NCBI RefSeq assembly: GCF_006345805.1
Contig: NC_043010.1
Span: 58,466,001-58,530,000, forward strand
DNA from: Octopus sinensis
Lineage: Eukaryota
Direction: 5' to 3'
DNA: 64,000 nucleotides
Under the pieces are notes generated by a model. It did no database searches. It was not told the origin of the DNA and worked only from the letters and a program-made list of their open reading frames with translations. Shown here piece by piece: positions 21,847 through 62,643 of the stretch (position 1 is the stretch's first letter; every line of letters begins with the position of its first letter). The position numbers were made by a program, and so were the translations under genes.

Positions 21847-21870
21847 TTATCTTTTGATTCGAGTTGGTAA
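21847..21870 (-). CDS. Pcdh: Terminal coding micro-exon of Pcdh unit B (LPTRIKR*)
   Basis: Acceptor ccatttttctctttctctttcAG (21871-21872); TTA CCA ACT CGA ATC AAA AGA TAA TAG; phase 0 matches the unit B donor; paralogous copies at 37493 and 62620. Confidence 0.8.
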   Translation of the reverse strand, partial: LPTRIKR

Positions 21871-23879
21871 CTGAAAGAGAAAGAGAAAAATGGAATTGTT
21901 TTCAAACTGAAAGACGAAATGGTTAAATGCAAAAAGATTGAGTTTTATATAGAAAGATAGAATGGCTTCATACACATGGATAAAATGGTTTTAAAAACAA
22001 AAGAAAGAATGGTTTAACATTTTTTTAAATGCAATGATACCAAAATATGTGGACCTTTCCCTCACAGCTCCTTCAGTTCCATGTGGTTGAGTATTCTTCC
22101 CCGACCCCATCTTGAGGATAAGAAGCATCAATAGTTCCTATTAAAATGTTTCAGAAACTATTTTAAAAGTCCTTCTACTATGAATTCTTGGATTATTTTA
22201 GCCTTTTACTTGTTTCAGTCATTAGATTCTGGCCATACTGGAGCATGTTGTAAAAAAAACACATTGCCACTCTGTGGGATTGAACTTAGAACCACATGAT
22301 TGCAGAGCAAACCTCTTAAACACACAGCCATCACTTCATCTCTATAAGTATGATTCAAAATCGAATTCGTTACATCTAAAATAATTCTGTCAAATTTTAC
22401 TTTAAGGCTATGGGTGGGGTGGGGTGGGGGTTAGTCCATTACACCCACCCCAGCACCTGACTGGTACTTCTTTTATCAACCCTAAAAGGATGATAGGTGA
22501 AGCATAAAATAATAAAATGGTTTCCAACTGAATGACGGAATATAATTAAAAACCAATCATTGCTTGTTAATTGTTGCTTTATTTGTTGTTTTGTCAAATG
22601 ATTTGATCTCAGGCAAGGTTCTGTTTTACACTCATTTTAGTATGAAATAGTTTATTGACTTGGATGACTGACTCTCTAACTAGAAAACTAACTACAACTG
22701 ACCACCACTGACCTCTCAGTTATTGGATATGAACCTGTTCCTTTGTCCTCTGCTTGGCAGAGAGTATCAAGCAGGGTTATGTGCCTTGTTCAGAGACAAA
22801 AACGCAACACTATGAGAAGAGTAAGATTTGAACTTATGACGTTGTGTGTGTGTAAGTCTCACTTCTAAAACTTGAGAAAAGTCTTACATATTTTTACTGT
22901 ATTTGTAGCCTGCAAATCAGTTGGTTGATTGGTTTTTCTGAAAACCTTAGCTTATCCAAATCGTCACTTAGGCAGTTACCCACAAAACCAAGTGCACCAA
23001 TTCTTATTGGTCTGAATGTGAATTTATAACCTGGATGAAGAAGCTGGAGGTTTCAAAGCAGTTGTCCTTAATTATCCTCTTTCTCTTTGATTTTTAATGA
23101 GATATTCACATCAGCATACTTCTAGTATATAATAATACTTAATGTATGCGTACCGTTGAAATGCTAGAAGCTGCAGATTTTGTCATGGAAAACTCTCTAT
23201 ATGTATTGTATTGAAAGACACAATACATCTTAGAGCTTGGGAAAAGGAAATTGCTCCAGAGGCAAATGAAAGAGCGACAGGTTCGTGCTTCACCACTTCT
23301 GGCTTGTCAGTCTTATGTACTCGTGTCACTTTCAAAACAAGATCAAATCAATTAGTCTGAAGTATAGAGGGACAGTGTAAAAACTATACATTGCTTTGCC
23401 ATGGCACTGCATGAGCAGAATAACGAATATACGAACAAAATATAGTTTTATATAACAAACACAGGACAAGACAGATTACAAAGCTAACAGTTTCTCATAA
23501 ATCTCCATCATAACCTGTGCCACATCTGAAAGGGCCTCTGCAAAGTAATTGCTGAAGAAACTAGCTGTGACTGTGGTGACTAAGCACTTATTTCTTTTTT
23601 ATGACAACCTTAGAAATGCCATTGTTTCAACACTGAATCAACATAACTGGTGATTTTAAATATAAAATATGACTGTATTTTGTGGTTCAGCTTTGGACTC
23701 TTTGGTGTAGGCAAACTCAATAGCAGTGATCTTCACCAACAGCAACAGTTATGTTCCAGACAGGCCCTCATCATCATCATCATCATCCTCATCACCAACA
23801 TCATTTAATGTCTGGTTTCCGTGCTAGCATGGGTTGAATGGTTTGACATGGAGCTAGCTGGACTATGCATCCACAAGAA

Positions 23880-24480
23880 TCTCCAGCATAAAATTATTTG
23901 GACACATTTTCAGTCTGAACGAGTCATCTCATTGATTTAGTCACAACATGTAAACATGGCATTGGTGATCTCTATAGAATGTTAAATTAATGTGTAGGGC
24001 TGCATGTCAAATGAATCCCTATCAAATAGGAACAAAACTGAAGTTGTTAGGAAAGTGTTTAGAAATAGTAAGAAGCTTCCAGAATGTTGGCAAACACTGA
24101 AAGCCAGCAATATCTGCATCTTTTCTTAAAGTTCTAAAGCATTCATCACCTAATGAGTGTTCATGGTCATGCTTCATATTAAATATTTATGCCACTGTTG
24201 CCAATTTCTTAGGATTCAGGACACACAAACACAAAGATTGGCTCAACAAAAATAACTCAGAAATATCTGACCTCTGAGATATCAATGATAAATCACACCA
24301 TAGACTGTTCAATCTTAATTCATCTAAAAATGAACATTTGAAGACGGAGAATTTAATAAAATACCAGAAATCTGCTTTGCAGAGAGAAACTGAGGGTAAT
24401 GAAGAATGCATGGTGGTTGAGTATATCTAAGGATATTCAGCTGGTTTTTGACAAAAAAAGACTCCAAAACAATGCCCAGC
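23880..24480 (+). mobile_element. Highly degraded RTE/BovB-like LINE fragment
   Basis: Translates ...WTHFQS..HLIDLV (endonuclease end) and LGFRTHKHKDWLNKNNSEISDL, similar to the RTE LG.xTRKHQDWFDEN motif; many stops. Confidence 0.5.
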
Positions 24481-25361
24481 TTGTTAAAACAGGTGTTTGG
24501 TCTTCATCAAAAACTTAGAATCCTCTCCCTTTTTACTAAAACCTCAGGTTACATCTTGTATAGCCAGATCTACTGGGACCTATTTCCTATCTCACTCACT
24601 AATGCTCCCACAGTACAGTTTCCGGAGGGCCAGGTCTAATGGCCTATCTACTGGAACTTGGTTTCTATGTCCTTCACCAGAGCCTCTACCTTGGTGGAAT
24701 CAATGATTTAACAGTGACTGCTATGGAACTCCCTTATGGGCTCCTGGCAATGATCTCATAGACTAGAAGGGTCCTACCTGATTAGATGATCACAGCTTAT
24801 ACATATTCCTCATCACATAAACATGATACCAGTACAACATATAACTCTGATTTCTTTCCACTGACATCCCATCAACTTTGCTAAACCACAAAACTCAGTT
24901 GTGTTATTCATGCATTTCCTGTTGCACTTGCCACCATCTGCAACAAAGCTTATCCTTTGGCAGGCAATAACACTATCTTAACTTGCTGAAATTGTAACCG
25001 ATGTGCAATCTAGACACATCACCTCAAGCTGAAACAGATTCCAGGAACAGAGACCCTTAAAGCCTTCACAAATAACTACTTAAAAATACAAATAAAGGAA
25101 AACACAGGATACAGTGAAAACCTGTTGACCCAATTCTGGAAATATTAATATTCATAAAATATAATTTAAGGTGCACTATATAAAAATAACTGTAACAATA
25201 ACGATGTCAAGTGGTTAAATATATTCATCTCACATATCTCCTGACTTTTTATCATTTATACACACACACACACGCACATGTACACACTCACATACAGACA
25301 TATACACAGGTTTACATAAATATACATTAAATTATACTATATAATATATAATGCAACTTAC

Positions 25362-27782
25362 CAATATTGTGGTGGGTGGACTCTTCTCCAGGGTACCCAC
25401 GTTCGACCAATCAATCTGAGATTCATACAGCGGGTAGAAATCTTCCTTACATTCCACAAATGGCATGTTTCTATTATTCATCTCAGAAGAGTACCTCACT
25501 GGGGTACCAGGAATACTGCTGCTCTGACACGGTAAAGGTTGATCAATTCTGTTACATATAGCTGACCTATTAACACCTTTCCTAGTGCTCTTGGCAGAGC
25601 GAGACTGACCACTGCTACATTTCATAATACACAATGTGATCGACACTACAATCACCACAGATACTATTACAGCTGCTACTACAAGGATAATCAATAATGG
25701 TACGTCCAGTGTTCTGTTCTTCTCTAAGTGGACAGTCGGCATTGGTGCTGATGTCTTGTTAGTGACCCTTAATGACAAAGACACAGTAGTTGTGGCTGAC
25801 AACACTGGGCTTCCAGAATCCTTGACCACAAGCACCAGTTCGTATGAGCCAGCATCGTTGAGATGAGGTGCACGCGAGAAAGACATTTGACCAGTTAAAG
25901 AGTTGAGTGTAAACAAGCGTTTATTGTTACCGTCAAGTATTCCATATTTGAGGAACGCATTTAAATGACTGTCTCTGTCAGACGCTCTAATCACAGTGAT
26001 GGCATTGGTACTTTGCGGGTGGTAGTGGACATTGATATGGAAAGGGTCAGTTGTAGGGTAGATGAAATACGGATTATTGTCGTTTCTGTCTAAAACCTCA
26101 ACAACAACATTCGCTGTGTTATTCAACGACGGTTTACCATTGTCTTTGACAAAAACCTCAAACTTATACATGTCTTCTTCTTCTCTGTCCAATGGTATGT
26201 TGCTGGTAATAAAACCATAATCACTCACCTGGAACGGTATGTTATTTCTGTCTTTACTCAACAGTGAGAACGTCAGTTGACCAGCACTTGCCAGGTCTGG
26301 GTCAGTGGCATTGATAAAACCTATAGGAAAGTTTGCTTTACCATTCTCATAGGTGAGGAAGTGGAATGTATCTTTGGTAAATTGCGGTTGCACATCGTTC
26401 ACATCCATTACTTGGATTGAGATCTTTCTCTCTGTCTTTAAAGCAGGGCTTCCATTGTCTTCACACACAATTCTCATGTTAAAATGGTCTAATGTTTCTC
26501 TGTCAAGGGATTTCTTCAGAGTAATCTTGTATTCCTTTGATCCTAAATGTGAGAGGACAACTGTATCATGTTCTAATTTACAACTCACTTCTCCATTTGC
26601 TCCAACATCGTTGTCCACCACATTCACATAAGCTAGATAACTGCCCACTTTTGTCCCTTCGTAAATAGCTGCAGTGCCCTTCTTCAATTCGGACACAAAA
26701 TTTATATCAATTTCAGGAGCATGGTTCTTTTCATTGAGAACATTCACCCGTACAATGGCAAAGGAATTTAAGGATGGATTCCCTCCATCTTTGGCCTCGA
26801 CATATAATTCATAAATGCGATCTCTCTCTTTTGAGAAATTTTCTGTGATAAACAATTTGCCAGACTCTCTTTTTAATATATAACATTTTTTAGCTTTGTC
26901 TGGTGTTTCTGAACTGAAATAATAAGACACTTTACCATTATTGCCAGAATCTGGGTCTTTTGCAGACAATGTCAAAATAGGGTTGTTGTTAGGATGTGTA
27001 TTTTTGATGGAAATATTGTAAATATGTTTTGAAAAAACTGGTGAGTTATCATTCACATCATTTATTTTAATATGAACATGTAGAATTCCTTGTTTTGAAG
27101 GTTGCCCTCCATCTTTAGCTATCACTTCTAGATTGTAACTATCTTTGATTTCTCTGTCTAGTTTGTCTCCAAGAACAATTCCTATCTTTGCTCTTCCTGT
27201 GATGGTTTTTCTCACAGACAATATAAATGGGTCGTTAAATTGTTTCTTCAATTTATATGTAATTTCTGAGTTTTCCATTCCAACATCTCTGTCAATGGCA
27301 TCTGGAATTAATCTTTCGGCTCCTTCTCCATCATCTTCATCATACGTAACATTTATTTGTTTCTGAGGAAACTCAGGGCTGTGATCGTTAATGTCTTCTA
27401 TAATTACTTTGACTTTCAGAATCTTCATAAAAGACTTGGCCTTGTTTACAGCTATTTTAATGTATTTGAAACATTGTTTCCTCGGTTTGCACAGAGACTC
27501 GGCATCAATTGTGTGTGCCGTGTACAATTTACCATCTTTAGTGACATTGAACACCTTGGAACTATCTGTTCTTCGGTGCTGTATTTGATTAAATATAATG
27601 GACGTCTGCTCATGTGATTCCATATTCTCCAAGACGAGGGAATCGGCTGCAACATCTCCAATAAATGTTCCTGTAATGTCTTCATCTTTCAAATAATATA
27701 CAATATCTTCACACACAGTGCTTTGCCAGAACAGAGCGAAGATACTCAGAAGAAAGAACAATTGCGTTTCCCTTGTTTCCAT
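25362..27782 (-). CDS. Pcdh: Protocadherin unit B large exon (signal peptide, EC1-EC6, TM, cytoplasmic tail; 807 codons, 814 aa with the terminal exon)
   Basis: Signal peptide METRETQLFFLLSIFALFWQSTVC; cadherin motifs DINDHSP, LDRE, AxDGG, DVNDNSP, DVNDVQP, DRNDNNP; EC1 Cys-X5-Cys (CKPRKQC) typical of Pcdhs; one TM; donor TTG|GTAAGT at 25361; 5' acceptor atatttcAG at 27817-27818. Symbol is family-level only. Confidence 0.97.
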
Positions 27783-36853: not shown

Positions 36854-36902
<49 letters not shown>

Positions 36903-37492: not shown

Positions 37493-37516
37493 TTATTTCT
37501 TGATTCGGGTGGGTAA
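37493..37516 (-). CDS. Pcdh: Terminal coding micro-exon of Pcdh unit A (LPTRIKK*)
   Basis: Acceptor ctatcttcttatcttccAG (37517-37518); TTA CCC ACC CGA ATC AAG AAA TAA; followed by GATGTCAC as in the 62620 copy. Confidence 0.8.
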   Translation of the reverse strand, partial: LPTRIKK

Positions 37517-39424
37517 CTGGAAGATAAGAAGATAGAACACAGTCAGAAATGGTGGTGGTGGTAGTGGGGGATGATGGTGAGGAGGAGGAGGAAGAAGATG
37601 AAGATGACTGATAATAATTTCTTTGGTACTCTACCTGTTGTGTATTACATAAAGTATGTATTTATTTCTTTATTGCCCACAGGGGGCTAAACATAAAGGG
37701 AACAAACAAGGCCAGACAAAGGGATTAAGTCGATTACATCAACCCCAGTGCATAACTGGTACTTATTTAATTGACACCAAAAGGATGAAAGGCAAAGCCG
37801 ACTTCAGCAGAATTTGAACTCAGAACATAACAGCAGACAAAAAACTTTTTTTTCCTCCTTTCTCATCAGAATAAGTGATCATTAATACATAAAGTGTGTA
37901 TTGTACATAAACCTGTATATTGATTCTTCATCATCATCGTTTAATGTCCGTTTTCAATGCTGGCATTGGTTGGACGGTTCGACTGGGGTCTGGGAAGCCA
38001 AGAGGCTGTACCAGGTTCCAATCTAATCTGGCAATGTTTCTACAGCTGGATGCCCTTCCTAACGCCAAACACTCTTAGAGTGTAGTGGGTGCTTTTTATG
38101 TGCCACCAGCACAGGAGCCACAGGGGGCTGGCATTGACCACATTCAGATGGTGATTGTTTGTATTATATAAATATCTATACACCGTGTATATATTGTATA
38201 GACATATCTATATACTGTATCCACAAGATAAAGATGTACCCACAGTAAATATTTCAATTGTCAGTTTTGGCTTGGTCTCTCCAGCTGGATGCCCTTCCTA
38301 ACTCCAACCACTTTGCAGAGTGTCAAGTGGTAGGAGCTTTTTGTGTAACCTGCATTGGTGAGGTTGCTAGGGAATTTGCAAGGCAAGAAAAGAAAGGAAT
38401 AAGAAAAAAAGAGGGGGGAAAAGAAAAAAGAAAAAGCTGCTTAATGAAGGATAGGAAGCTGATTAATGAAGGATAGGAAGGTGTAGTTGGAAGGGGTGAT
38501 GGTTCCATGCCAGGGATTGAGAGGTTGGGGTGAGATGGCAGAGTAAGCCTAGGTGTTTTGCTATGGTGATATAAGGATCCCAACATTATATAATGGTAGG
38601 TGGGATTTGCTGGAAGTCTGGAAAGAAGGGATGTGGTGGTGGGTTGTTGGAGTATCTCAAGATATGGGGTTGATATTAAAGGGGATGCAGGCAGTGGATC
38701 CTGGTAGGGGACGGAAGGGAAGTTTTATTAGGGTGTGAGGAGAGAGAGTTTGAGAGACAAGAGAGGCTCACCAGAGTGGCCATGCAAAGCAGGGTGTGAT
38801 GGAGGTAGTTTTCAAATTGTATAAAAACGTGTAATATACAAATAAATATCTGTAAATATAAAACCATCCGAATTTCTGAGTACCTCATTTCTTCTAAGAT
38901 ATATATATATATGTATATATATATGTTACACAAACCTGCATATATATTATATAGAAACATATCTATATATATATATATGTTACACAAATCTGCATATATA
39001 TTATATAGAAACATATCTACATACTGGATATTTTTCCTATATACCACATAATTATACAGTGTGTATATAACTGTATATACATGAGTATATTACGTACATA
39101 ACCATCATCATCATCATTTAACCTTTGTCTTCCATGCTAACATGGGTTGGATGGCTTGGCAGGAGCTGGTATGAATGGAAGGCACACCAGGTTCCATTGT
39201 CTGTTTCTGGCTTGATTTCAACAGATGGATGCCCCTCCTAATACCAACCATTTTACAGAGTAGACTGGGTGCTTTTTGCATGGTACCAGGACAGGCAAAG
39301 TTTGTTTTGGTATGGTTTTTACATCTGGATAACCTTGCTGATGCTTCAATCCTGTAACATAGTATCTGTGTGAAGGCGCATGGCTCAGTTGAGCTCGTTG
39401 AGCTTACGACCATGAGGTTGTGAG

Positions 39425-41222: not shown

Positions 41223-41270
41223 CATGATGGATATTTAATACTATACATTTTGGATAATATATATATAATA

Positions 41271-45550: not shown

Positions 45551-45594
<44 letters not shown>

Positions 45595-46080
45595 CTGAAA
45601 TTGTGAGGAGCATGGAATCACTCTTTACCCATGTTCTGGATATGAATAATATCGAGGGATGAGGTCCTGGTTTGGGAGTTCTGGGGGGTGATGAGCATGG
45701 ATTCACCCCATAATTACAATTATTCCTAGCTTTGTTCTGATCCTGAACCATAGTACCTGTCAGGGTTCCGTCTATGGGTTAAATAGATTTCCCAGGCACC
45801 TAGCGTAGCTAGGAGGGGGTACGGGCAGTTGTCCAACCCGCACAGCACTTTTAATGGGGCACACTTTTGGGTCTGCTCTAGGCAATATTTTTTTGTGTGG
45901 GGTGCTGAGGGGAAAAACAGAAGGGCCACCCTGGGTGGCACACACTAGCTACACTAGTGCCTGTTACTTTTTACAAAGCCATGGAGAAGGAACTCTTCTA
46001 GAAGATGGATACTCTGACATAAAACTTGCAGTCCAAATAATAGCAGCCATCTTGCAATGTTTGTCACTGGAATCACTTGA

Positions 46081-46301
46081 CCCTTTTGTTACCAACCTGG
46101 CTGAAACCGCCTCTGGCTCTGTAGTACAAATGTCTTGTTTTCAAAAGTTCTGAATTAAAATCTTCCACCAAACCTTAGTCACAATTTATGTTCCTAACAC
46201 TAGCTTAATGACAACTAAGTTATTTCACTAAATTCTTTGTTATATTTAAAGTAATTGAAAAAGATACTGAGCATCTCAAAATAAATAGAGTAACGAAAGG
46301 G
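46081..46301. mobile_element. piggyBac-like MITE
   Basis: TIRs cccttttgttac / gtaacgaaaggg; flanked on both sides by TTGA (46077-80, 46302-05). Confidence 0.6.
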
Positions 46302-46514
46302 TTGATGTGATTGAGAGAGAGGCATAAGTGTTGTACAAGCTTTTGTCAATTAAATCCAGTGGTATTCAGCTATTTCTCTATCACTTCATATCTGTCCACA
46401 TGGAAGGATGAAAGTGAATGAGAAACAATCAAGCTGAATGTGAGATGACTATCATCTGAAAAGATGAGACAAGCATCTTTTGTATGTATGTATGTATGTA
46501 TATATATATATATC

Positions 46515-46815
46515 ATGGACTCTCCCATCGGTAGACGATGTATGAAGGTTCGGTACTTTCTTGCCGAATGACCACACAGATGATTTGTTTATAGTGATCA
46601 AATATTTGTGTCCACATAAGCTCACTCCCTCCTTCAAATCGACATTACCTGTACAGGTGCACCAAGTGACATATGTCAGGTGACGAAATGATTGCAGAGC
46701 AACAAGAAATGAAGTGCTTTGCTCAAGAACACAATGCAATGCCCGGTCTGGGAATTGAGCCCATGATCTCACAATCAAGAGTGCAACACCATAACCACTA
46801 AGCCAGGCGCCTTCA
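46515..46815 (-). mobile_element. Second tRNA-derived SINE family, minus-strand copy
   Basis: Minus strand begins gaaggcgcctggcttagtgg...caattcccagaccgggc...tgtgttcttgagcaaagcactt, like 48081. Confidence 0.65.
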
Positions 46816-48080
46816 CATATATATGTGTGTGTGTTTGTGTTTATCATATATTTCATTATATGTATGTATGTATGTATATATCTATCGACATGTGTGTGTG
46901 TGTGTGTGTCTATATGGATATTTGTATGTTTTCATATATATCGTGTTTATATTAGCATTGCTGTCTCCATATCATCTCACCTGGATTTCTTTCAGAGCCA
47001 CTCTTTACACAGAATCCAAGTCCCCAGTAAAGACTTCAGGGCACTACTACATGTTTCCTATACTGAATATTTCTAGCTCTCACCTTTTGACTCTGTGTGT
47101 GTGTGACAGAGAGAGAGATAGAAAAAGAGTGAGAGAGAGAATATGCTCATAGCAAGAGAGAATGATTTGCAAATAGAAGACATGGAGTGATGAAAGCAAT
47201 AGAGAAAGAGAGAGAGAACAGCAAAGAGGCAGTGAGAGATTGGCACTTGTTTGGTTTTCTATGTATTTCATCAACCTTATTCTGACCTTTTTTATTACTT
47301 TATGTTTTGAATATCAAAGACTCAGATTCTGTCCCCATCACACCAAAATTTTTGAATTAATGAAAAATTAATTAAAACTTTTAAAAAATATTTTAACTAA
47401 TTAATTTTATTTTTATATTTTTAATTAAAAAGAAAAAGTTAATTAAAATTTCAGAGTTGTGCTTGTCTATCAAGTGAGTTGATCTGAGGCCATGCGTTTC
47501 AAGACCGAAGCTACTAAACTCTTGGAGAAACATTGTGTGAGACAGCAAAGAAGTTGAATTCACTTTAGATTGAAAGTATTTCATGAAGTGTCAAAATTTT
47601 CATTATATAACTGTGACCTGGTCACTGACACAGGGTCACTGTAACTAGGGAACCAGGTTCCAAATCATCATCATCACCACCTTCATCATCATTGTTCTTG
47701 TCATCATCATCCTTGCTGTCATCGTTTTTATTATCATCATCCTCGTTGTCATCTCATCAATGTTCTCATCCTTGTCATCATCGACATCCTCATCTCTGTT
47801 GTCGTCGTCATCAGCATCATCCTCATCATCGTCATTGTAATATCCTCTTTTCCAAGTTTGCATGGCTTAGATGGAGCTTATTGTGTTATATATCTTTTAT
47901 CTTTTACTTCTTTCAATCATTGAACTCTGGCCATGCTGGGGCACTACCATGAATAGTACTCATTCTACAAGGCTCTTTTTGTGCAAACTACTAAGTCACA
48001 TGGCTGTCAACAAACCAACACCAGTTAAGTGGTGATGGGGACAAACACACCTGATAAACACAAGTATATAAATCTGCAGT

Positions 48081-48398
48081 GAAGGCGCGTGGCTTATTGG
48101 TTTGGGCATTCGGCTCACGATCGTAAGGTTGTGAGTTCGATTCCCGGCGACGCGTTGTGTCCTTGAGCAAGACACTTTATTTCACGTTGCTCCAGTCCAC
48201 TCAGCTGGCAAATTGAGTTGTACTGTATTTCAAAGGGTCAGCCTTGTCACTCTCTGTGTCACGCTGATTATCCCCGAGAACTACGTTAAGGGTACACGTG
48301 TCTGTGGAATGCTCAGCCATTTGCACGTTAATTTCACGAGCAAGCTGTTCCGTTGATCGTATCAGCTGGGACCCTCGTCGTCGTAACCGGCGGAGTCT
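48081..48398 (+). mobile_element. tRNA-derived SINE (second family), young CpG-rich copy inserted into an older SINE
   Basis: Pol III A-box (tggcttattggtt) and B-box (gagttcgattccc), followed by the tgtgtccttgagcaagacact central domain. Confidence 0.75.
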
Positions 48399-48578
48399 TG
48401 TAAATCTGCAACATCATTCGTTCTGTCACAGCCAACCAAATTCACTCACAGGGCATTGATTGGCTGGATTGGAAGATCTTGCTGGAACTGAACTCAAAGC
48501 CATATGGTTGAGAAGCAAACGTTTTACCATTCAACCATGCCTGCATCTTTCTCTGTGTGTGTGTGCGTGTGTGTGTAT

Positions 48579-48609
<31 letters not shown>

Positions 48610-48630
48610 TGTATATATATATATACACAC

Positions 48631-48662
<32 letters not shown>

Positions 48663-48769
48663 GTATATATATATACACATATATATATACACATATATAT
48701 ATGTATATATATACACACATATATATATGTATATATATATACATATATATATATGTATATATATATGTG

Positions 48770-48850
<81 letters not shown>

Positions 48851-49259
48851 GTATGATGTGAGGCAGATAAGAGTATGTGAAGTATTCATCAGAGACCTGT
48901 CTGCTGACGTAAGCACACTCTGGCTTACGTACAGACTCTCATATTCTTCATCCTGCAACAACTACACTGCCTCCAGATGGGACACTTTGTACATCACATC
49001 TTGAACTGAAGGACCTTGAAAGCCCTGCTACATGAGGAAGTGGCTTCTAGCAAGACAGCACAAGGACAATGACATCTGTTTTCCTTTCATAGATGTGAGC
49101 AAGAGAAAGAGACGAACTCTCCTTATATGAAGATCAAAAAATGGGAGAATATTGCTGAGTAAAATGAATCTCAGTTGGTTTGAAATAATGATTTGTCCAT
49201 CTGTTCCATTAACTATGTGTTGATATTTAATACTGTATATTGTACATATATCTACATAT

Positions 49260-51480
49260 TGGAGCTCTTATTGTACTGAGCTGCAACGCCCAAACTGGCT
49301 CGAAAGTTATGCCTCTGGAGATGTGAACATTATACTTCTGAACATTCTGAATTCAATATGGACAGCATGTGCAGCATCGGTACCACTCAAGCACAAAAAA
49401 AACACCCAATAATGCAATTTGGGAGACTGGAGCAGTCTGACTTGTCAGGAAAGAATGCAGTAATGCTGAACAGGAATACAGAATGCACAAATCAGAGATC
49501 AACAGGAAAAAGCGCAATAGATCATCCAACCACCTCAAGCAGGTGACAAAAAAGGCAGTGCTTGAATTCGAACAGCGCATAGCAACCAACCCTGTTGGCA
49601 AAGTGTTCTGGAAGTATGTCTGTTCAAAACAGAGACCTCACTCTCCAGTTGGTCCCCTTCGCAATCCCCACACAGGACAGATTACTGGCAATCCCAAAGA
49701 ATGTGCAGAAATCATTGCTGGATGCTATGCAGGCATCTTTACTGTCGAAGATCGAAATGTTCCATCCCCATCACCACTGACACTGGACCCTATAACTACT
49801 ATGAAATTTACACCAGCAATGCTACAATGCCAACTTAAGAATAAACGCAACTATGCCTCTCCTGGTCTCGATGGTGTTACATACCTACTTCTCAAACATG
49901 GTGGGTACTTTCTTCTAAGCCAATTTTCTCTATTCTTCCAATTCTGTCTTGACAATGGTGTTACTCCAGAGCAGTGGAAAACTGCCAGTGTTATCCCTCT
50001 GTTCAAAAAAGGTGACCGCACATCGCCTGTCAACTATTGCCCTGTTAGTCTTACTAGCTGCATCACCAAACTGATGGAATCCTGTGTCAGGGAAACCCTC
50101 TGGAACTTCTGGAAGTCTCACAGCCTCATCCAGCTGTCACAATTTGGTTTTATTCCTAACTCCAGCTGCTGTAATCAACTCATCGAGTTTGTTGAGGACA
50201 TTACCCAAATCACTGATCGCAGATCCTGGGTGGATGTTGTTTACCTGGACTTTGTTAAGGCTTTTAATTCTGTGCCACACAAAAGACTTATGGTGGAACT
50301 CTCTGCGATGGGTGTAAGAGACTATCTCTATAACTGGTTGAAGTCCTTTATTATCGGCTGAAAAGAGTTTGTCACAGTTCTAGGACAGCACTCTTCACCC
50401 TATGAGATGACATCTGGTGTACCACAGGGATCTGTTCTTGGTCCCCTTTTATTTGTTGCATATGTTAATGACATAGATGCCAACTTAAAGAATGCCACAG
50501 TGCTGAAATATGCAGATGACATCAAGCTGTACATTGAAATAAAGAGGTCAGATCCTGTACACTATAGATCTGTATTGCAATCAGACCTGGACACAATGCA
50601 GCAGTGGATCATGGACTGACAACTCAAGCTGGCTGTGGACAAATGTACCACCATGCATTTTGAGAGGAAACACTCAGCGTCTACTTACTCCCTCCACAAC
50701 ACTAATCTCAAAAAGTCTTCGCGTGAACGTGACCTGGGTGTTATTGTCGACAGTGATTTGCGTTGGACAAAACACATCGCTAAAATTGCCAATAAGGCTG
50801 AGGGTGTCTTGGCATCACTCACCAAGTCCTTTGCGAGCCGCTCTCCGGCTATCTATCTGCGGCTTTATATAGCTATGGTGCGACCTAACCTGGAATTTGC
50901 ATCACCGGTCTGGAACCCCTATCTTGCCCAGGATATTAATCGTCTGGAAGCCATTCAGTGACGTGCAACCAAAAGAATACCCTCCATTGGGCATTTGCCA
51001 TATTCTGAACGCCTTACTTCCGTGGGCATGGATACACTGAAACTCCGATGTCTGGCAGCTGACTTGGCAGACACCCATAAAATTATTAACCATCTTACAA
51101 ACAATAACTCTGAGCACCTTTTCAAACTCCACCTGTCTAACACCCATGGACATGTTTACAAAGTCAGAAAACAGCACAGCTCCCATGACTTCAGGAAACA
51201 TTTTTTCACGCTGAGGGTTGCTGAAGCATGGAACAAACTGCTGGCATCAGTTGTTAGTTGTCGGAGCACTGCATCCTTCAAAACTTCCATGCTTCCTGAG
51301 ATTCGCCAACACTACACCTGATTTTCTCCCCGCCCCATACACACGCAAGCATGTATCTGACTCATACACTGTTCACTTCCCAGACATTTGTACATTACTG
51401 CACATGCTTTATACGCACTTTTGACAAGTTGTGGTGCACCTGAGCACTGTATGCAATAATTTCATTATTATTATTATTAT
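49260..51480 (+). mobile_element. CR1-group LINE, 5'-truncated, inactivated by nonsense codons
   Basis: ORFs at 49483, 50407, 50635 and 50995 share one frame, separated only by TGA stops; SPGLDGV, YCPVSLTS, VYLDFVKAF, SGVPQGSVLGPLLF, YADD, ERDLGV; (ATT)n tail ends at 51480. 5' edge approximate. Confidence 0.93.
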
Positions 51481-52088
51481 ATATATAACATGATATCATC
51501 ATCATCATCATCGTCGTTTAACGTCCGTTGGGCGATTCTTTCTTGTCTGGGGATTCATGGTCAAACAGTTGGGTGGAAATGCGCAAAAAATTACAATGAT
51601 CCGGTGGTGATGCTGGGCTTTGTATTTTTTTCAAAGCTCCCATGGTTACTGAGATAATCTTCTATAATCATACACTTGTGTTAATGAATGAGAAAGAAGG
51701 GGGTGATAGATGAATAAGGAAGGAATGGTGATGTCATACTTGGTAGTGGGATGATGAAGATTGTACGCTGAAAAAAATAAATCAAAACAGCATTTTGTGT
51801 GTGTATGTAAAAGGCGGGTATGTGTGTGTGTGTACATGTGCGCCTGCAATGGAAGTAGGAGGGTTCATCTTTGTTCACTTAGTATTTGAGTTTATTTTTT
51901 CATTTGGTTGAATCTTGGTTGGTTTTTTTTTGTTGTTGGTCAGTTATTTTTAGCGTTTTGACAGAAAAAAGTCATTCTAAAATTGTTTTTTAATGTAACT
52001 GTGCCCAAATAAGTCGAATGCTTACACAGAGCAGGTTTTACAGCCACATCATCCAGACCGACTGAGTGAAACTGGGCTTAGCTGCTAG

Positions 52089-52098
52089 CATATATATA

Positions 52099-52182
<84 letters not shown>

Positions 52183-52256
52183 TATAGATATAGATATATA
52201 TATATATATACTTATATATATATATATAAAAATATACATATAAATATAGATAAATA

Positions 52257-52313
<57 letters not shown>

Positions 52314-52349
52314 TAAATATATATATTATATATATATGTATATATATAT

Positions 52350-52387
<38 letters not shown>

Positions 52388-52413
52388 ATATATATATATA
52401 TGTATATATATAA

Positions 52414-52469
<56 letters not shown>

Positions 52470-52520
52470 AGTATATATATATATATAAGTATATATATAT
52501 ATAAGTATATATATGTACAC
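52089..52520. repeat. Long imperfect (TA)n microsatellite, representative of many (TA)n, (CA)n, (GATA/GACA)n and (ATT)n tracts
   Basis: Direct inspection. These tracts account for most IYIYIY/HTHT ORFs in the track. Confidence 0.95.
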
Positions 52521-52649
52521 ATATACACACACATTACTATATGTCATAAACATGAATATACATTGTGTTGCATATAAAGACCTCATATATTTAATAAACT
52601 TGTCTAAATTCTGCAGATAATACATATAAACATGTCTGCATACTGTATA

Positions 52650-53560
52650 TGATGTGGTATTAAAAAGTTCCTGGACTAGTTCTGTAGTGTCCCAACAGAT
52701 CACAGCACATGGTTGCATGCACAATACAGAGCTAGCAGTGACCTTCATGGGGCAGTGTACCAAGCAACATTGCTGTGCTTACTTCACAAGTTGTGAAATT
52801 TGTGTTTTTGTGATCACGTGTGTCTGCTGTAATCTGCAATTCTATCATGGAGAGGAACAAAGAGCCAACATAAAATTTTGGTTAATCTTGGGAAGTCTGC
52901 TGCAGAAACATCGAACATACTTCAGTAAGCTTACAGTGATGATGAGGCAATGGGTTGTACGTAATGTTTTGGAGTGGCATGGGTGCTTCAAAAGCAGAAG
53001 AATGAACCTGAAAGGCCTGGCACAAGTGTCACCCCTAGAAATGTGGTATTGTGCATCAAGAATTCGTCACCCCAGGGCCAGATCATCAATCGAGAGTTCT
53101 ACTGTAACGTTTTGAAGCATTTGAAGGAGGGCACTTGGTGATGACAACCACATCTGTGGAACGCAAAGTAATGGATTCTTCATGATGACAATGCACTTTG
53201 TCACCAAACTTCCTCATTCATGAGTTTCTTGCCAAAAAACAACATGGTACCACTTCTGCACCTGCCCTATTCACCAGATTTAGGCACCGGTGGAGTTCCC
53301 TCTCTTCCCCCAAGATGAAAAGGCAGCTCAAAGGCCACCATTTTAGTACTGTGCTCAAGATCAAGAGTGAAACATAGAAGGTCCTCAGCTCACTTATGGA
53401 AAATGACTTCCAGGCTGGATACCAAAACTGGCAGGAAATCAGAGACCAGTGTGTTATTGTGCAAGGTTGACTATTTCAAAAGTGATGAGATAAAAACTTA
53501 GGTAAATAAGTTATTTTTTATTAAACATAACTAGTTCGCAAAGCTTTTGATTTGACCTCT
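52650..53560 (+). mobile_element. Degraded mariner element
   Basis: EQRANIKF..LGKSAAET..LQ.AY; LHDDNA; cctattcaccagatttagg (PYSPDL); degenerate TIRs (aaaaagttcctggactagt / actagttcgcaaagcttttg). Confidence 0.75.
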
Positions 53561-54281
53561 TTTGATAAACATTGTATACAACACATAAACATGTCTAAAC
53601 TCTGCATATTTCATAAGCATCTCAACAAACTGTCCTTAATAATAAGAAGAAAGCTTTTAGAAGTGGGAACCACACACTGAAGGTGAAGAATACCAGAACA
53701 TAGATAACGACAAACCTAAAAATTTTGTGAGGGAGTACAACTTTATTAATTAAAGTAACCAAAACTATTATGGCCAGTGTAAGAGATCATTATATATGGT
53801 AACTTGTTACATGACTTAGTGAGAGGAAGGAGGTGTTTCCTTAAAAACCAATTTAGGGGCTCTGTGACTGCTGGAAAGAAGGGGGGAAGTTAAAGGGTTG
53901 GAATATTGGACCCTATTTAGGATAGCCACAGCCAAGTGATGGTGTTTAACTGGACAACAGATTAAGTCTATCAACGAAAAGAGTAATGGACTCTTCCAAA
54001 CTCACATATTATCACATCTTGAGGGCTGGTTTTGGGGGACAGCAAATAATGTTATTCATTTTGATGAATGACAATAGGGAGTAGGGCTTGTGTGAGAGAG
54101 CACAAATTCGAATTTAGGGCTCTGCAATGATTATAAGGAAGACAAAAAGGAAGAGGAGAGGGGGAGAGGGACATGCAAGAGGTTGATGATGAGGAAATGG
54201 ATGGGGAAGAAGAAAATGTAGTGAGGAACAATGACAGGAGTGATTAGGGTTAAGTATATTTGATGATGTTAAATACATATT

Positions 54282-54356
54282 ATATGCACTTTCTGACAAG
54301 TCGTGGTGCACCTGAGCACTGTATACAATAAATTCATTATTATTATTATTATTATT
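54282..54356 (+). mobile_element. Short 3'-end fragment of the CR1-type LINE
   Basis: gcactttctgacaagtcgtggtgcacctgagcactgtatacaataa plus (ATT)n matches 51413-51480. Confidence 0.8.
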
Positions 54357-54481
54357 CACACATATACATATATAATATAAAATAATAGACATAGAAAGTT
54401 ACATGGATAGACAGACAGATAAACACAGAAACATATAGATAGATAAATAGACAGATAGAAAGATTATATAATGCAACTTAC

Positions 54482-56907
54482 CAATATTGTATTGGGTGGA
54501 CTCTTCTCCAGGGTACCCACGTTTGACCAATCAATCTGAGACTCATACTGCGGGTAGAAATCTTCCTTACATTCCACAAATGGCATGTTTCTATTATTCA
54601 TCTCAGAAGAGTACCTCACTGGGGTACCAGGAATACTGCTGCTCTGACACGGTAAAGGTTGATCAATTCTGTTACATATAGCTGACCTATTAACACCTTT
54701 CCTAGTGCTCTTGGCAGAGCGAGACTGACCACTGCTACATTTCACAATACACAGTGTGATCGACACTACAATCACCACAGATACTATTACAGCTGCTACT
54801 ACAAGGATAATCAATAATGGTACGTCCAGTGTTCTGTTCTTCTCTAAGTGGACAGTCGGCATCGGTGATGATGTCTTGTTAGTGACCCTTAATGACAAAG
54901 ACACAGTAGTTGTGGCCGACAACACTGGGCTTCCAGAATCCTTGACCACAAGCACCAGTTCGTATGAGCCAGCATCGTTGAGATGAGGTGCACGCGAGAA
55001 AGACATTTGACCAGTTAAAGAGTTGAGTGTAAACAAGCGTTTATTGTTACCGTCAAGTATTCCATATTTGAGGAACGCATTTAAATGACTGTCTCTGTCA
55101 GACGCTCTAATCACAGTGATGGCATTGGTACTTTGCGGGTGGTAGTGGACATTGATATGGAAAGGGTCAGTTGTAGGGTAGATGAAATACGGATTATTGT
55201 CGTTTCTGTCTAAAACCTCAACAACAACATTCGCTGTGTTATTCAACGACGGTTTACCATTGTCTTTGACAAAAACCTCAAACTTTACATGTCTTCTTCT
55301 TCTCTGTCCAATGGTATGTTGCTGGTAATAAAACCATAATCACTCACCTGGAACGGTATGTTATTTCTGTCTTTACTCAACAGTGAGAACGTCAGTTGAC
55401 CAGCACTTGCCAGGTCTGGGTCAGTGGCATTGATAAAACCTATAGGAAAGTTTGCTTTACCATTCTCATAGGTGAGGAAGTGGAATGTATCTTTGGTAAA
55501 TTGCGGTTGCACATCATTCACATCCATTACTTGGATTGAGATCTTTCTCTCCGTCTTTAAAGCAGGGCTTCCATTGTCTTCACACACAATTCTCATGTTA
55601 AAATGGTCTAATGTTTCTCTGTCAAGGGATTTCTTCAGAGTAATCTTGTATTCCTTTGATCCTAAATGTGAGAGGACAACTATATCATGTTCTAATTTAC
55701 AACTCACTTCTCCATTCGCTCCAACATCGTTGTCCACCACATTCACATAAGCTAGATAACTGCCCACTTTAGTTCCTTCATAAATAGCTGCAGTGTCCTT
55801 CTTCAATTCAGACACAAAATTGATTCCTATTTTGGGGGGATGGTTCTTTTCATTGAGAACATTCACCCGTACAATGGCAAAGGAATTTAAGGATGGATTC
55901 CCTCCATCTTTGGCCTCCACATACAATTCATAAATGCGATCTCTCTCTTTTGAGAAATTTTCTGTGATAAACAGTTTTCCGGAATGTTTTTTTAAAATAT
56001 AACATTTTTTAGCTTTGTCTGGTGTTTCTGAACTGAAATAATAAGACACTTTACCATTATTGCCAGAATCTGGGTCTTTTGCAGACAATGTCAAAATGGG
56101 GTTGTTGTTAGGATGTGTATTTTTGATGGAAATATTGTAAATATGTTTTGAAAAAACTGGTGAGTTATCGTTTACATCATTTATTTTAATATGAACATGT
56201 AGAATTCCTTGTTTTGAAGGTTGCCCTCCATCTTTAGCTATCACTTCTAGATTGTAACTATCTTGTATCTCTCTGTCTAGTTTGTCTCCAAGAACAATTC
56301 CTATCTTTGCTCTTCCTGTGATGGTTTTCCTCACAGACAATATAAATGGGTCGTTAAATTGTTTCTTCAATTTATATGTAATTTCTGAGTTTTCCATTCC
56401 AACATCTCTGTCAATGGCATCTGGAATTAATCTTTCGGCTCCTTCTCCATCATCTTCATCATACGTAACATTTATTTGTTTCTGAGGAAACTCAGGGCTG
56501 TGATCGTTAATGTCTTCTATAATTACTTTGACTTTCAGAATCTTCATAAAAGACTTGGCCTTGTTTACAGCTATTTTAATGTATTTGAAACATTGTTTCC
56601 TCGGTTTGCACAGAGACTCGGCATCAATTGTGTGTGCCGTGTACAATTTACCATCTTTAGTGACATTGAACAACTGGGAACTTTCCATCCATTCTTGCTG
56701 AAGTTGGTTATATGTTAGTAGATCTCTGTCTGTCAGAGATCCACTGTCACCAAGCATGGCATCAGCAGCAACATCTCCAATAAATGTTTGGGGACTACTT
56801 TCTTCGTCGACATGGTACTCGAGGTCAATTGAAATGCAGGAGTGTAGTAATGCAACCAAAATATTTATTTGAATGATCAACTGTCGACCTGGCGTTCCTC
56901 CTTCCAT
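54482..56907 (-). pseudogene. Pcdh: Protocadherin unit A large exon with a 1-bp deletion at 55285/55286 (true pseudogene allele or assembly error); 816 aa if repaired
   Basis: ATG at 56907 (MEGGTPGRQLIIQINILVALLHSCIS; the ORF-track start at 56988 is TTG). ATG TAT AAG of unit B reads ATG TAA AG here, giving a stop in EC5. The remainder (54482-55284) continues in the shifted frame to donor TTG|GTAAGT at 54481. Confidence 0.92.
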
Positions 56908-59968: not shown

Positions 59969-60001
<33 letters not shown>

Positions 60002-60943: not shown

Positions 60944-61975
60944 CACACACCCAGATCATTATGGGTGGGACTACAGGCATTATGTTGTTACTACATACAG
61001 GAACCAAACTTGCTCAAATTTCAGCATAGTTTAATTATTTGTATTGTGTGTGTAGAATATATAAACATATGATGTATATTATTTATACACATATGTGATA
61101 TTGTTTGTGTGTGTATAAATTTGTTCTAGTATTTGAGTAAATGGTGTGTGTGTGTAGATTATATATACATTAAAGTATGCAAGTAAAATGTTTATATATA
61201 TTCTGTCTTTGTGTAAAATGCATATATTGCAATGTGTATGTGTGTGTGGTGTGTGAAATGTGTATTTCCAATGTGTTGGGATTTGTGTATCTATATATAT
61301 ATGTGTGTGTGTGTGTATTTAAATGTGAGTGTAGAATGTGCAGATACAAGTATGTGTGTGTGTAAAGTGTCTATATCAATATCAAGGTATGGGTCTTGCA
61401 GTAAAATGTGCCAGGAATATTTCAAAGATTGGTGAAATGTAATTCCTTAAATCATTTTTTTTAGAGTCTCTAAGTTTTTAACTTATATCAATAATATCTT
61501 ACAAAGTTATGTGAAGTTGTCTGGGAAGTAGTGGCTTTCATACAATGCTAGTAGCATTTAGGGCTTAAGTAAAAAAGAAGAAATCTTGTTATTTGAACCT
61601 GGGTCCCTAACTGTTTCTATGTCTCTATGGGTGTACATCATGTGGTAGACCACTGCAACTTCACATGCATATCAAAGATATCTCCCTACATGATATGGAT
61701 TTATGGTGTTCCCACATTCACTATATGTTGGAGACTCTTCCACACCATGTGGAACTATTGCATACAGACCTCAGCAAATGATAGAGACCTATTCTGGAGA
61801 TCTACCACATGTTGGAAATGTACAGTAGGAAGATCTTTCCCATGTGGTGAATGTATGTTGAAGAAGTTTTACTGCATGTAGCAAACGACCATGTGGAGTT
61901 ATAAACATCATTAAACAATAAACCTAACTTAGCATAACACTTAAACTGATATTTTCAAACAAATATGTTGAGTGA

Positions 61976-62071
61976 TACCATGGAGTGATGCCACCATGGA
62001 GTGACAACACCATGGAGTGATGACACTATGGAGTGACGACACCATAGGGAGATGACACCATGGAGTGATGA
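61976..62071. repeat. 16-bp x6 minisatellite (caccatggagtgatga)
   Basis: Direct inspection; lies between the unit 0 stop codon and the unit A leader. Confidence 0.9.
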
Positions 62072-62619
62072 AGTGATAGGTGTTTAGAAGTCTACTGAGT
62101 GTTGTGATACTACATGAAGACTTAGGGAAGAAGAGTGGTGTGTCTTGTTGAAGGACTGAGAGTAACTGCTGGAGATTGCTGTTGTTTAGCCCTAGGTTAA
62201 ACCTGACTGAGGAGACCTATGCTCTAAGATATTCCACCGATGACCATACCATCATTCTATGGGTATCTAGGATTACATTTTCAAATGTGACATTCCTTGT
62301 TTGAAATGCTAGGGTATAATTTGAGGGAGATTTGTTCTGTAAACCCGTGTATCTGTAGTAGTAGTTGTGGTGGTGGTGGTGGTGGTGGTGGTAGTGGTGG
62401 TGGTGGTGGTGGTAGTGGTGGTGGTGGAGAGATGTTGCAGTTGTTAACGTTGTTATAATGGTTGTTGGGTGAAGTGTTGAGTAGCTGTAAAGAGTGTGAC
62501 TATTTGAGATATGTTGTTGTTGTTGTTGTGACTATATCCAGTAGCGAAATGATGTTGTTGCAATTGTATCCAGGGGTTAAATGGCTGTTGTTGTGACTGT
62601 ATTCCATGTAGAGTGACAT

Positions 62620-62643
62620 CTACTTTTTAATTCGAGTTGGTAA
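62620..62643 (-). CDS. Pcdh: Terminal coding micro-exon (LPTRIKK*) of an upstream Pcdh (unit 0) whose large exon presumably lies beyond the window end
   Basis: Acceptor ctttacttctttttcAG (62644-62645); TTA CCA ACT CGA ATT AAA AAG TAG ATGTCAC. Confidence 0.75.
   Translation of the reverse strand, partial: LPTRIKK

What the first reader, a model, noticed from the sequence alone, without database searches (positions are those of the whole stretch)
21847..62643. Hidden three-exon repeating unit: each protocadherin has its own 24-nt terminal exon encoding a conserved LPTRIK[K/R]-COOH
Seen: three strong acceptors (21871, 37517, 62644) each open onto 7 codons plus a stop, giving LPTRIKR, LPTRIKK and LPTRIKK. 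The third-position bases differ (CCA/CCC, ACT/ACC, ATC/ATT, AAA/AAG) while the peptide is kept, and the flanks are unrelated. All are phase 0, matching the TTG|GTAAGT donors of the large exons, and each lies about 1-4 kb from the next unit's leader exon. Established: vertebrate clustered Pcdhs splice variable exons to shared constant exons with a lysine-rich C-terminus. Inference: here the C-terminal motif is kept constant by selection on separate per-gene micro-exons rather than by a shared exon, and the basic C-terminal heptapeptide is probably a functional trafficking or membrane/adaptor-binding signal. ORF-based annotation would miss it and give the wrong C-terminus (VSCII...).
Basis: partly seen in the sequence, partly recalled or inferred. 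Interest (0 to 1): 0.82.

Follow-up and report, generated by a model that had tools for sequence, protein, structure and literature searches.

The report
Protocadherin genes' own tiny last exon
Three tandem octopus protocadherin genes each splice their one large exon to their own last exon, which adds seven conserved residues (LPTRIKK or LPTRIKR); this is real and under selection, but public gene models already contain it and it is confined to one small octopod subfamily.

Summary
Three minus-strand sites (21870-21847, 37516-37493, 62643-62620) read cag|LPTRIK[KR]-stop, where chance predicts none. The window is Octopus sinensis CM016872.1:58466001-58530000.

The splicing interpretation is supported indirectly but strongly.
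- A RefSeq model (LOC118766020) contains exactly the 25362>21870 junction.
- The spliced gene 1 product is 99% identical to O. vulgaris CAI9733544.1, including LPTRIKR.
- In 13 gene units from O. sinensis, O. vulgaris and Argonauta hians, large-exon donors and LP..K[KR]-stop terminal exons alternate strictly 1:1, all in phase 0.
- Flanks are at random-level identity (about 0.3), against 0.83 for the 21 coding bases.
- Codon differences are 44 synonymous to 10 conservative.

Three corrections are needed.
- It is not hidden: gene models in four species already carry it.
- It is not a feature of every protocadherin. Only the short-tailed FYPQYESQ clade has it, 17 of the 120 best family hits, and an exhaustive profile search found nothing outside that clade.
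- The 24 nt are only the coding start of a 3'-terminal exon.

The proposed function (trafficking, adaptor or lipid signal) is untested, and the peptide fits no canonical dilysine, PDZ or SH3 motif. Overall this is an ordinary gene structure carrying a small, undescribed conserved tail.

The parts
62620..62643 (-). Coding start of the 3'-terminal exon (LPTRIKK, then stop TAG) of a protocadherin gene whose large exon lies beyond the window end (>64000). The acceptor AG is at 62645-62644.
54482..56907 (-). Gene 2 large exon CDS, from the ATG at 56907 to the donor ...NTIL|GTAAGT at 54482. This assembly has a 1-nt deletion at about 55286 that gives an immediate stop. A candidate acceptor would start the exon at 56954.
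37517..54481 (-). Intron of gene 2 (16,965 nt). It is inflated by retrotransposon remains: reverse-transcriptase ORFs on the + strand at 42485-44549 and 49483-50361.
37493..37516 (-). Coding start of the 3'-terminal exon of gene 2 (LPTRIKK, then stop TAA).
25362..27782 (-). Gene 1 large exon CDS, intact: signal peptide, 6 cadherin repeats, a transmembrane helix and about 85 cytoplasmic residues, ending ...TTIL|GTAAGT. A candidate acceptor (tttcag|) would start the exon at 27816.
21871..25361 (-). Intron of gene 1 (3,491 nt, phase 0).
21847..21870 (-). Coding start of the 3'-terminal exon of gene 1 (LPTRIKR, then stop TAA). The junction is present in the RefSeq model LOC118766020.
13689..14154 (-). 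Truncated relic of a third large exon, 98% identical to the transmembrane and tail part of genes 1 and 2. Homology is lost before the YESQ motif. It has no donor and no terminal exon downstream.

Best explanation
The three sites are the coding starts of the 3'-terminal exons of three tandem paralogous protocadherin genes. These genes belong to an octopod-specific, short-tailed subfamily that I call the FYPQYESQ clade.

Each gene has one large exon. It encodes the signal peptide, six cadherin repeats, the transmembrane helix and about 85 cytoplasmic residues, and ends in a consensus phase-0 donor (TTG|GTAAGT). A 0.5-17.5 kb intron follows. The gene's own last exon then contributes LP[T/K][R/W]..K[K/R]-COOH, the stop codon and the 3'UTR. 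Tandem duplication copied the whole unit, so every copy carries its own last exon. Purifying selection on the peptide keeps the 7-8 codons while introns and UTRs have diverged beyond recognition.

Shown: the sequence anatomy, the 1:1 arrangement, the conservation pattern, and the presence of the junction in public gene models.

Inferred: that the junctions are used in vivo at these three particular loci, and that the peptide is a cytoplasmic short linear motif. My best guess is a small basic, proline-containing docking or membrane-lipid contact site at the free C-terminus.
For: Anatomy and identity
- Pattern statistics and canonical acceptors and donors in phase 0.
- The window is O. sinensis CM016872.1:58466001-58530000.
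- RefSeq protein P0001 (LOC118766020, 134 aa) ends ...TTILLPTRIKR. Its CDS range of 3,896 nt equals window 25742-21847.
- The spliced gene 1 product is identical to P0001 at 134/134 residues, and to O. vulgaris CAI9733544.1 at 806/814, including the tail.

Other gene models
- Nine other O. vulgaris models in the same 90%-identity cluster end NTILLPTRIKK. Argonauta hians models end LPTRIKK or LPTRLKK. Sister genes end LPTRIPKR, LPTRTLKR, LPTRTSKK, LPKWLPKR or LPTRIQKC.
- The O. vulgaris annotation was built with Iso-Seq and RNA-seq (PMC10700109).

Arrangement and selection
- Donors and terminal exons alternate strictly in 13 units across 6 loci of three species.
- Mean pairwise identity is 0.83 in the 21 coding bases, against 0.27-0.32 in flanks beyond the polypyrimidine tract. 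Codon differences are 44 synonymous to 10 non-synonymous, the latter all K/R or I/L.
- Across the clade, Leu uses TTA/CTT/CTG, Thr uses all four codons, and Arg uses CGA/CGT/AGA/AGG.
- The MAFFT alignment shows conservation only from the polypyrimidine tract to the stop.
Against: - No spliced read or cDNA could be examined. Two tail searches of the protein collection gave no transcript-derived contig.
- The O. sinensis annotation here is poor. Gene 2 and most of gene 1 are swallowed by a 4,660-aa fused model whose junctions in the window are non-canonical.
- Gene 2 carries a frameshift in this assembly, so its terminal exon may belong to a pseudogene.
- Six clade members are annotated with different 3' exons after the same donor, so this last exon is not the only possible end.
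- The functional guess has no direct support. The peptide matches none of the canonical C-terminal motifs I checked by eye.
Confidence: 0.85

Rival explanations
1. The terminal exon works as a shared, vertebrate-style constant exon: several upstream large exons splice to one downstream LPTRIK exon, and the per-gene pairing is only apparent.
For: All donors and all terminal exons are in phase 0 and encode near-identical peptides, so any pairing would be productive. Cross-unit splicing is annotated: RefSeq isoform X3 (P0013) joins the donor of one large exon to the acceptor of the next gene's large exon 68 kb away, using canonical sites. Fused multi-ectodomain models exist in three species.
Against: Donors and terminal exons alternate strictly 1:1 in all 13 units examined, with introns as short as about 0.5-0.6 kb in Argonauta and O. 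vulgaris. No large exon lacks its own terminal exon, apart from the truncated relic at 13689-14154. The fused models have non-canonical junctions in the window.
Confidence: 0.06
2. The 21-24 bases are conserved for a nucleotide-level reason (a splicing enhancer, a 3'-end processing signal or a small dispersed repeat), and the peptide is incidental.
For: The conserved block is very short and sits directly at a splice acceptor.
Against: Third codon positions turn over freely, and Leu and Arg switch between codon families while the amino acids stay fixed, with 44 synonymous to 10 conservative changes. The pattern occurs only after protocadherin large exons in the window and in the five other loci scanned. 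The flanks are unrelated, so it is not part of a repeat.
Confidence: 0.03
3. The similarity only reflects very recent duplication or gene conversion. There is no selection on the tail, and the three sites may not be used.
For: The large exons of genes 1 and 2 are 96.5% identical over 2,329 nt, which shows recent homogenisation in this array. Recent tandem copies in O. vulgaris and Argonauta have 98-99% identical terminal-exon flanks.
Against: In the window the homogenised block stops 17 nt into the intron and does not include the terminal exons, whose flanks are at random-level identity. The peptide is kept between the families Octopodidae and Argonautidae.
Confidence: 0.03

Closest known systems
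Vertebrate clustered protocadherins alpha and gamma (variable exons plus three shared constant exons)
   Same: Both have head-to-tail arrays of large exons, each encoding the ectodomain, transmembrane helix and proximal tail and each ending in a donor. Both have a basic extreme C-terminus. [quoted passage not shown]
   Different: Here every large exon has its own last exon, in 1:1 alternation. The added part is 7-8 residues rather than about 125-150. There is no sequence similarity, and no conserved Ser/Thr-basic PKC context across the clade.
Vertebrate Pcdh-beta genes and non-clustered delta-protocadherins
   Same: They are independent genes, each with its own 3' end. Delta-Pcdhs have a large first coding exon followed by small gene-specific 3' exons that carry conserved cytoplasmic motifs.
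   Different: Pcdh-beta genes are single-exon. Earlier work found no delta-Pcdh motifs (CM1-3) in octopus Pcdhs (PMC6339937). The octopod tail motif is unrelated and sits at the very C-terminus.
Octopus protocadherin expansion as published (168 'multi-exonic' genes, mostly in tandem clusters)
   Same: It is the same gene family, organism group and tandem arrangement, and 'multi-exonic' already implies gene-specific small exons (PMC6339937 citing Albertin 2015; PMC10084454).
   Different: No paper in the searchable library contains the string LPTRIK. The clade-specific tail and its own exon are not described in the papers I could read. Albertin 2015 and Wang & Ragsdale 2017 were not available to read.

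Membership tests
Protocadherin (cadherin superfamily) | Six or seven extracellular cadherin repeats followed by a single transmembrane helix | tested here: met
   Pfam finds Cadherin_2 (28-112) plus 5 Cadherin stretches, whole-protein E=1.9e-66. A hydropathy scan finds one hydrophobic segment of about 25-30 residues starting near residue 690.
Protocadherin (cadherin superfamily) | Ectodomain, transmembrane helix and proximal tail encoded by one unusually large exon | tested here: met
   There is an uninterrupted 2,421-nt CDS at 27782-25362, and the same arrangement in gene 2 and in L002-L007.
Vertebrate-type clustered Pcdh locus (alpha/gamma) | Many variable exons spliced to one shared set of constant exons | tested here: not met
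   Donors and terminal exons alternate 1:1 in 13 units of three species. The window holds three terminal exons for two large exons plus one upstream of the window.
Vertebrate-type clustered Pcdh locus (alpha/gamma) | Tandem head-to-tail array of paralogous large exons | tested here: met
Vertebrate-type clustered Pcdh locus (alpha/gamma) | Own promoter with a conserved sequence element upstream of each variable exon, with stochastic choice | not tested
   No leader exon or promoter could be located. Only candidate acceptors 34 and 47 nt upstream of the ATGs were seen.
Neuronal internal microexon (27 nt or less, flanked by two introns) | An internal exon with both an acceptor and a donor | tested here: not met
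   The stop codon lies inside the exon. Sites 2 and 3 have no donor after the stop, and site 1 has only a fortuitous TAG|GTAAAC. This is the coding start of a 3'-terminal exon whose end (poly-A site) is undetermined. AATAAA/ATTAAA hexamers lie 109-1,584 nt downstream.
C-terminal dilysine ER-retrieval signal (KKXX / KXKXX) | Lysine at position -3 together with -4 or -5 from the C-terminus | tested here: not met
   In LPTRIKK and LPTRIKR position -3 is Ile and -4 is Arg. In LPTRIPKR position -3 is Pro. The motif definition is from my own knowledge.
PDZ-domain ligand | Hydrophobic residue at the C-terminus | tested here: not met
   The C-terminal residue is K, R or once C. The motif definition is from my own knowledge.
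Class II SH3 ligand (PxxPx[KR]) | Two prolines three residues apart, followed by x-[KR] | tested here: not met
   In ...TILLPTRIKK only the core hydrophobic-P-x-R (LPTR) is present. The 8-residue variants carry two such cores (LPTR-IPKR, LPKW-LPKR) but not PxxPxR. The definition is from my own knowledge.
Gamma-Pcdh-like lysine-rich lipid-binding C-terminal motif | A lysine-rich stretch that binds phosphoinositides and has an embedded PKC-target serine | not testable with these tools
   Only 3 of the last 4 residues are basic. The Thr is not in a conserved [ST]-x-[KR] context and is replaced in LPKWLPKR. Lipid binding needs an experiment. The reference motif is in PMC10849722.

The most novel reading that the evidence does not exclude
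The LP[T/K][R/W]..K[K/R]-COOH tail could be an octopod-invented cytoplasmic signal. It would control surface delivery, turnover or membrane-lipid and adaptor contact of one protocadherin clade, converging functionally on the lysine-rich end of the vertebrate gamma-Pcdh constant domain. Because every donor and every terminal exon is in phase 0, read-through transcription could let large exons use neighbours' exons, as one annotated isoform suggests. That would give a primitive, vertebrate-like variable/constant logic built from per-gene parts.
Probability: 0.15. Interest if true: 0.55.

Novelty: already known. Interest (0 to 1): 0.28.

Why it matters
The practical point is that ORF-only reading of cephalopod protocadherin loci gives wrong C-termini, whereas evidence-based annotation already gets them right.

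The biological point is small but real. One octopod protocadherin clade has a short tail whose last 7-8 residues are under clear purifying selection on separately evolving exons. That marks them as a candidate short linear motif in a family whose intracellular signalling is essentially unknown.

It also gives a clean contrast with vertebrate clusters. In both, arrays of large exons each end in a donor. In octopods the C-terminus is kept constant by selection on many copies rather than by sharing one exon.

Tried and rejected
Searches that gave nothing
- Two tail-only searches of the 5.8-billion protein collection aimed to catch transcript-derived (Logan) contigs carrying ...TILLPTRIKK. The first returned only two RefSeq models and the second nothing. 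The word index is evidently lossy for short queries, so this is not evidence of absence.
- Exact-sequence look-ups of P0132 and P0006 were not on record. I therefore could not show a RefSeq model that uses the terminal exon at 62643.
- Albertin 2015 could not be read by PMC id or DOI.
- BLAST of the window's intergenic stretches against the other loci gave only dispersed repeats, so no leader exon was identified.

Ideas considered and rejected
- A chance match.
- A dispersed repeat.
- A shared constant exon.
- The 4,660-aa RefSeq fusion model as evidence of in-frame exon chaining. Its junctions in the window sit directly after in-frame stops and lack AG.
- A dilysine, PDZ or class II SH3 motif, by inspection of the alignment.
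Full report
**Observation**

The degenerate pattern for L-P-T-R-I-K matches exactly three times in the 64-kb window, all on the minus strand, at 21853-21870, 37499-37516 and 62626-62643. None of 100 dinucleotide-preserving shuffles gave a match. Allowing two mismatches adds no further site.

On the minus strand each site follows a polypyrimidine tract and CAG, and opens on seven codons and a stop:
- cag|TTACCAACTCGAATCAAAAGATAA
- cag|TTACCCACCCGAATCAAGAAATAA
- cag|TTACCAACTCGAATTAAAAAGTAG

The two large minus-strand ORFs end ...ACAATATTG|GTAAGT, at 25362 (intact ORF, 27782-25362) and at 54482. Both donors are in phase 0.

**Identity of the locus**

The window is Octopus sinensis assembly GCA_006345805.1, CM016872.1:58466001-58530000. 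The large ORF encodes a protocadherin. Pfam finds Cadherin_2 plus five Cadherin repeats. There is one hydrophobic transmembrane segment starting near residue 690, followed by a cytoplasmic tail of about 90 residues.

**Is the junction real?**

I could not examine RNA reads, so the evidence is indirect. Four lines agree.

1. *Gene models.* RefSeq protein LOC118766020 (P0001, 134 aa) ends ...EKSPPTTILLPTRIKR. Its CDS range of 3,896 nt corresponds to window 25742-21847, which means the junction 25362>21870 is already annotated. My spliced gene 1 product (814 aa) matches P0001 at 134/134 residues. It matches O. vulgaris CAI9733544.1 at 806/814, tail included. Nine further O. vulgaris models in the same 90%-identity cluster end NTILLPTRIKK. 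That annotation used Iso-Seq and RNA-seq (PMC10700109). Argonauta hians models end LPTRIKK or LPTRLKK, and an O. bimaculoides model ends LPTRVKR.

2. *Arrangement.* I scanned the window and five other loci (O. sinensis L004, O. vulgaris L005 and L006, A. hians L002 and L007). Large-exon donors (YESQ..W...L|GTAAGT) and AG|LP..K[KR]-stop sites alternate strictly, giving 13 units. Introns range from about 0.5 to 17.5 kb.

3. *Conservation.* Among six independent 7-codon copies, mean pairwise identity is 0.83 in the 21 coding bases. It is 0.27-0.32 in flanks beyond the polypyrimidine tract, which is random level. Codon differences are 44 synonymous against 10 non-synonymous, and all of the latter are K/R or I/L. 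MAFFT finds no alignable flank. Across the wider clade Leu is TTA, CTT or CTG. Thr uses all four codons. Arg is CGA, CGT, AGA or AGG. This is the signature of selection on the peptide, not on the nucleotides.

4. *Depth.* The motif is shared by two octopod families, Octopodidae and Argonautidae.

**What needs correcting**

- *It is not hidden.* Public models in four species already contain it.
- *It is not general.* Among the 120 best family hits, only 17 carry the FYPQYESQ..W...L| large-exon end. Eleven of these end in LP[T/K/A][R/W]..K[K/R/C], with variants LPTRIPKR, LPTRTLKR, LPTRTSKK, LPKWLPKR and LPTRIQKC. The other six are annotated with different 3' exons after the same donor, and one of those exons is conserved between Octopus and Argonauta.
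- *Other subfamilies end differently.* Examples are ...QLPSTPDVVTS and variants built around YEEIP.
- *Nothing turned up outside the clade.* An exhaustive HMM search with a profile of the tails against 1.84 billion representatives gave only 17 hits at E<=0.001. Only P0002 (O. bimaculoides), a member of this clade, matched through the C-terminal profile positions. This absence is weak evidence, because it depends on other genomes' annotations capturing such a small exon.
- *"24-nt terminal exon" is imprecise.* The stop lies inside the exon, and sites 2 and 3 have no donor after it. The 24 nt are therefore the coding start of a 3'-terminal exon that continues into a 3'UTR of unknown length. AATAAA/ATTAAA hexamers lie 109-1,584 nt downstream.
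- *The CDS has two exons.* A third, 5' leader exon is plausible. Candidate acceptors lie 34 and 47 nt upstream of the two ATGs. RefSeq isoforms of a sister gene have a leader exon 1.8 kb upstream of an acceptor that lies 33 nt before the ATG. I could not locate leader exons in the window.

**How the array evolves**

The large exons of genes 1 and 2 are 96.5% identical over 2,329 nt (25345-27669 against 54465-56788). The block ends 17 nt into the intron and about 110 nt short of the ATG. Their terminal exons and introns are unrelated.

So the body of the large exon has been homogenised, by gene conversion or by a partial duplication, while the older terminal exons evolve independently and still keep the peptide. 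Intron 2 (16,965 nt) is inflated by retrotransposon remains.

Gene 2 has a one-base deletion, ATGTA-AAG against ATGTATAAG in gene 1, which gives an immediate stop. This is either a pseudogene or an assembly indel.

**Mechanism**

*Shown.* A phase-0 donor after ...T-I-L, the gene's own acceptor 3.5 or 17 kb downstream, and a product ending LPTRIK[K/R].

*Inferred.* The tail is a cytoplasmic short linear motif at the free C-terminus, about 90 residues from the membrane. By inspection:
- It is not a KKXX or KXKXX retrieval signal, because position -3 is Ile or Pro.
- It is not a PDZ ligand, because the last residue is basic.
- It is not a canonical PxxPx[KR] SH3 ligand.

It does contain a hydrophobic-P-x-R core. 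The 8-residue variants carry this core twice (LPTR-IPKR, LPKW-LPKR), and the 7-residue form looks like LPTRIPKR minus the second Pro codon.

The nearest functional analogy is the lysine-rich, phospholipid-binding, PKC-regulated last 15 residues of the vertebrate gamma-Pcdh constant domain (PMC10849722). There is no sequence similarity, and the octopod tail has only three basic residues. I put about 0.3 on [quoted passage not shown]. Nothing here tests it.

**Comparison and novelty**

The architecture is that of independent multi-exon protocadherin genes in tandem, as published for octopus: "168 multi-exonic" genes in head-to-tail clusters (PMC6339937; PMC10084454). It fails the defining test of a vertebrate alpha/gamma cluster, which is shared constant exons.

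No paper in the searchable library contains LPTRIK. The motif itself therefore seems undescribed, but the exon is in public annotation. I rate it "already known" as a sequence feature, with a minor undescribed motif. Interest is 0.28.

**Rivals**

- *Shared constant exon.* Contradicted by the 1:1 alternation. However, one RefSeq isoform does join an upstream paralogue's donor to the next gene's large-exon acceptor through canonical sites, so the units are not perfectly insulated.
- *Nucleotide-level element or repeat.* Contradicted by the synonymous turnover and by the restricted occurrence of the pattern.
- *Recent duplication only.* Contradicted by the random-level flanks and by conservation in Argonauta.

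Noticed in passing
window 55280-55290 (minus strand): Gene 2's large exon lacks one base relative to gene 1 (ATGTA-AAG against ATGTATAAG), which gives an immediate TAA and a frameshift. This is either a young pseudogene or an indel error in the long-read assembly.
   Followed up: partly
window 13689-14154 (minus strand): A 409-nt relic is 98-99% identical to the transmembrane and tail part of the large exons. It loses homology just before the YESQ motif. The 4,660-aa RefSeq fusion model uses it as its C-terminus.
   Followed up: partly
window 25345-27669 vs 54465-56788: A homogenised block (96.5% over 2,329 nt) covers only the body of the large exon. It ends 17 nt into the intron and about 110 nt from the ATG. 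The signal peptides and starts of EC1 differ, and the introns and terminal exons are unrelated. This suggests gene conversion or a partial duplication.
   Followed up: partly
window 35541-35924 and 60344-60727: A 384-nt direct repeat is 99.5% identical, more alike than the coding exons. Each copy lies 1.6-1.9 kb downstream of a terminal exon and upstream of the next large exon. It was not found in the O. vulgaris or Argonauta loci. It could be a promoter or leader segment, or a young insertion.
   Followed up: partly
L004:3001-3046 joined to L004:71072 (O. sinensis, about 0.45 Mb from the window): The first coding exon of RefSeq isoform X3 of a sister gene (P0013) is the out-of-frame 3' end of the upstream paralogue's large exon. 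It is spliced from that exon's normal donor to the next gene's large-exon acceptor 68 kb away, skipping the upstream gene's own terminal exon. This is annotated read-through, cross-unit splicing.
   Followed up: yes
window 27791 and 57066 (junctions of RefSeq XP_036365280.1, 4,660 aa): The fused mega-model chains at least five large exons. In the window its exon starts sit directly after in-frame stop codons and lack an AG acceptor, so it looks like an annotation artefact. Similar fused models exist in O. vulgaris (1,571 aa) and O. bimaculoides (1,044-1,162 aa).
   Followed up: partly
window 42485-44549 (+) and 49483-50361 (+): Reverse-transcriptase ORFs lie inside gene 2's 17-kb intron, on the opposite strand. 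Pfam RVT_1 scores E=2.4e-32 and 2.6e-11, and the first ORF has a weak PHD-finger hit. They are retrotransposon remains.
   Followed up: partly
window 39422-39964 vs 40645-41193: An inverted repeat of about 550 nt (81% identity) flanks and overlaps a 204-aa ORF (39941-40555, +) that has no Pfam hit. It may be a transposon remnant.
   Followed up: no
window 36800-37330, 48560-48850, 52090-52560, 11390-11900: These are related low-complexity or tandem-repeat tracts at 67-88% identity. One of them lies just downstream of the terminal exon at 37493.
   Followed up: no
proteins P0021-P0122 (other octopus protocadherin subfamilies): Many other octopod protocadherins carry a conserved YEEIP near an apparent exon boundary, followed by short variable ends. 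YEEI is the classic Src-family SH2 target sequence (from my own knowledge). Another group ends ...NSF[TS]SY.KPLPA[VI]PK. These may be further exon-bounded cytoplasmic motifs.
   Followed up: no
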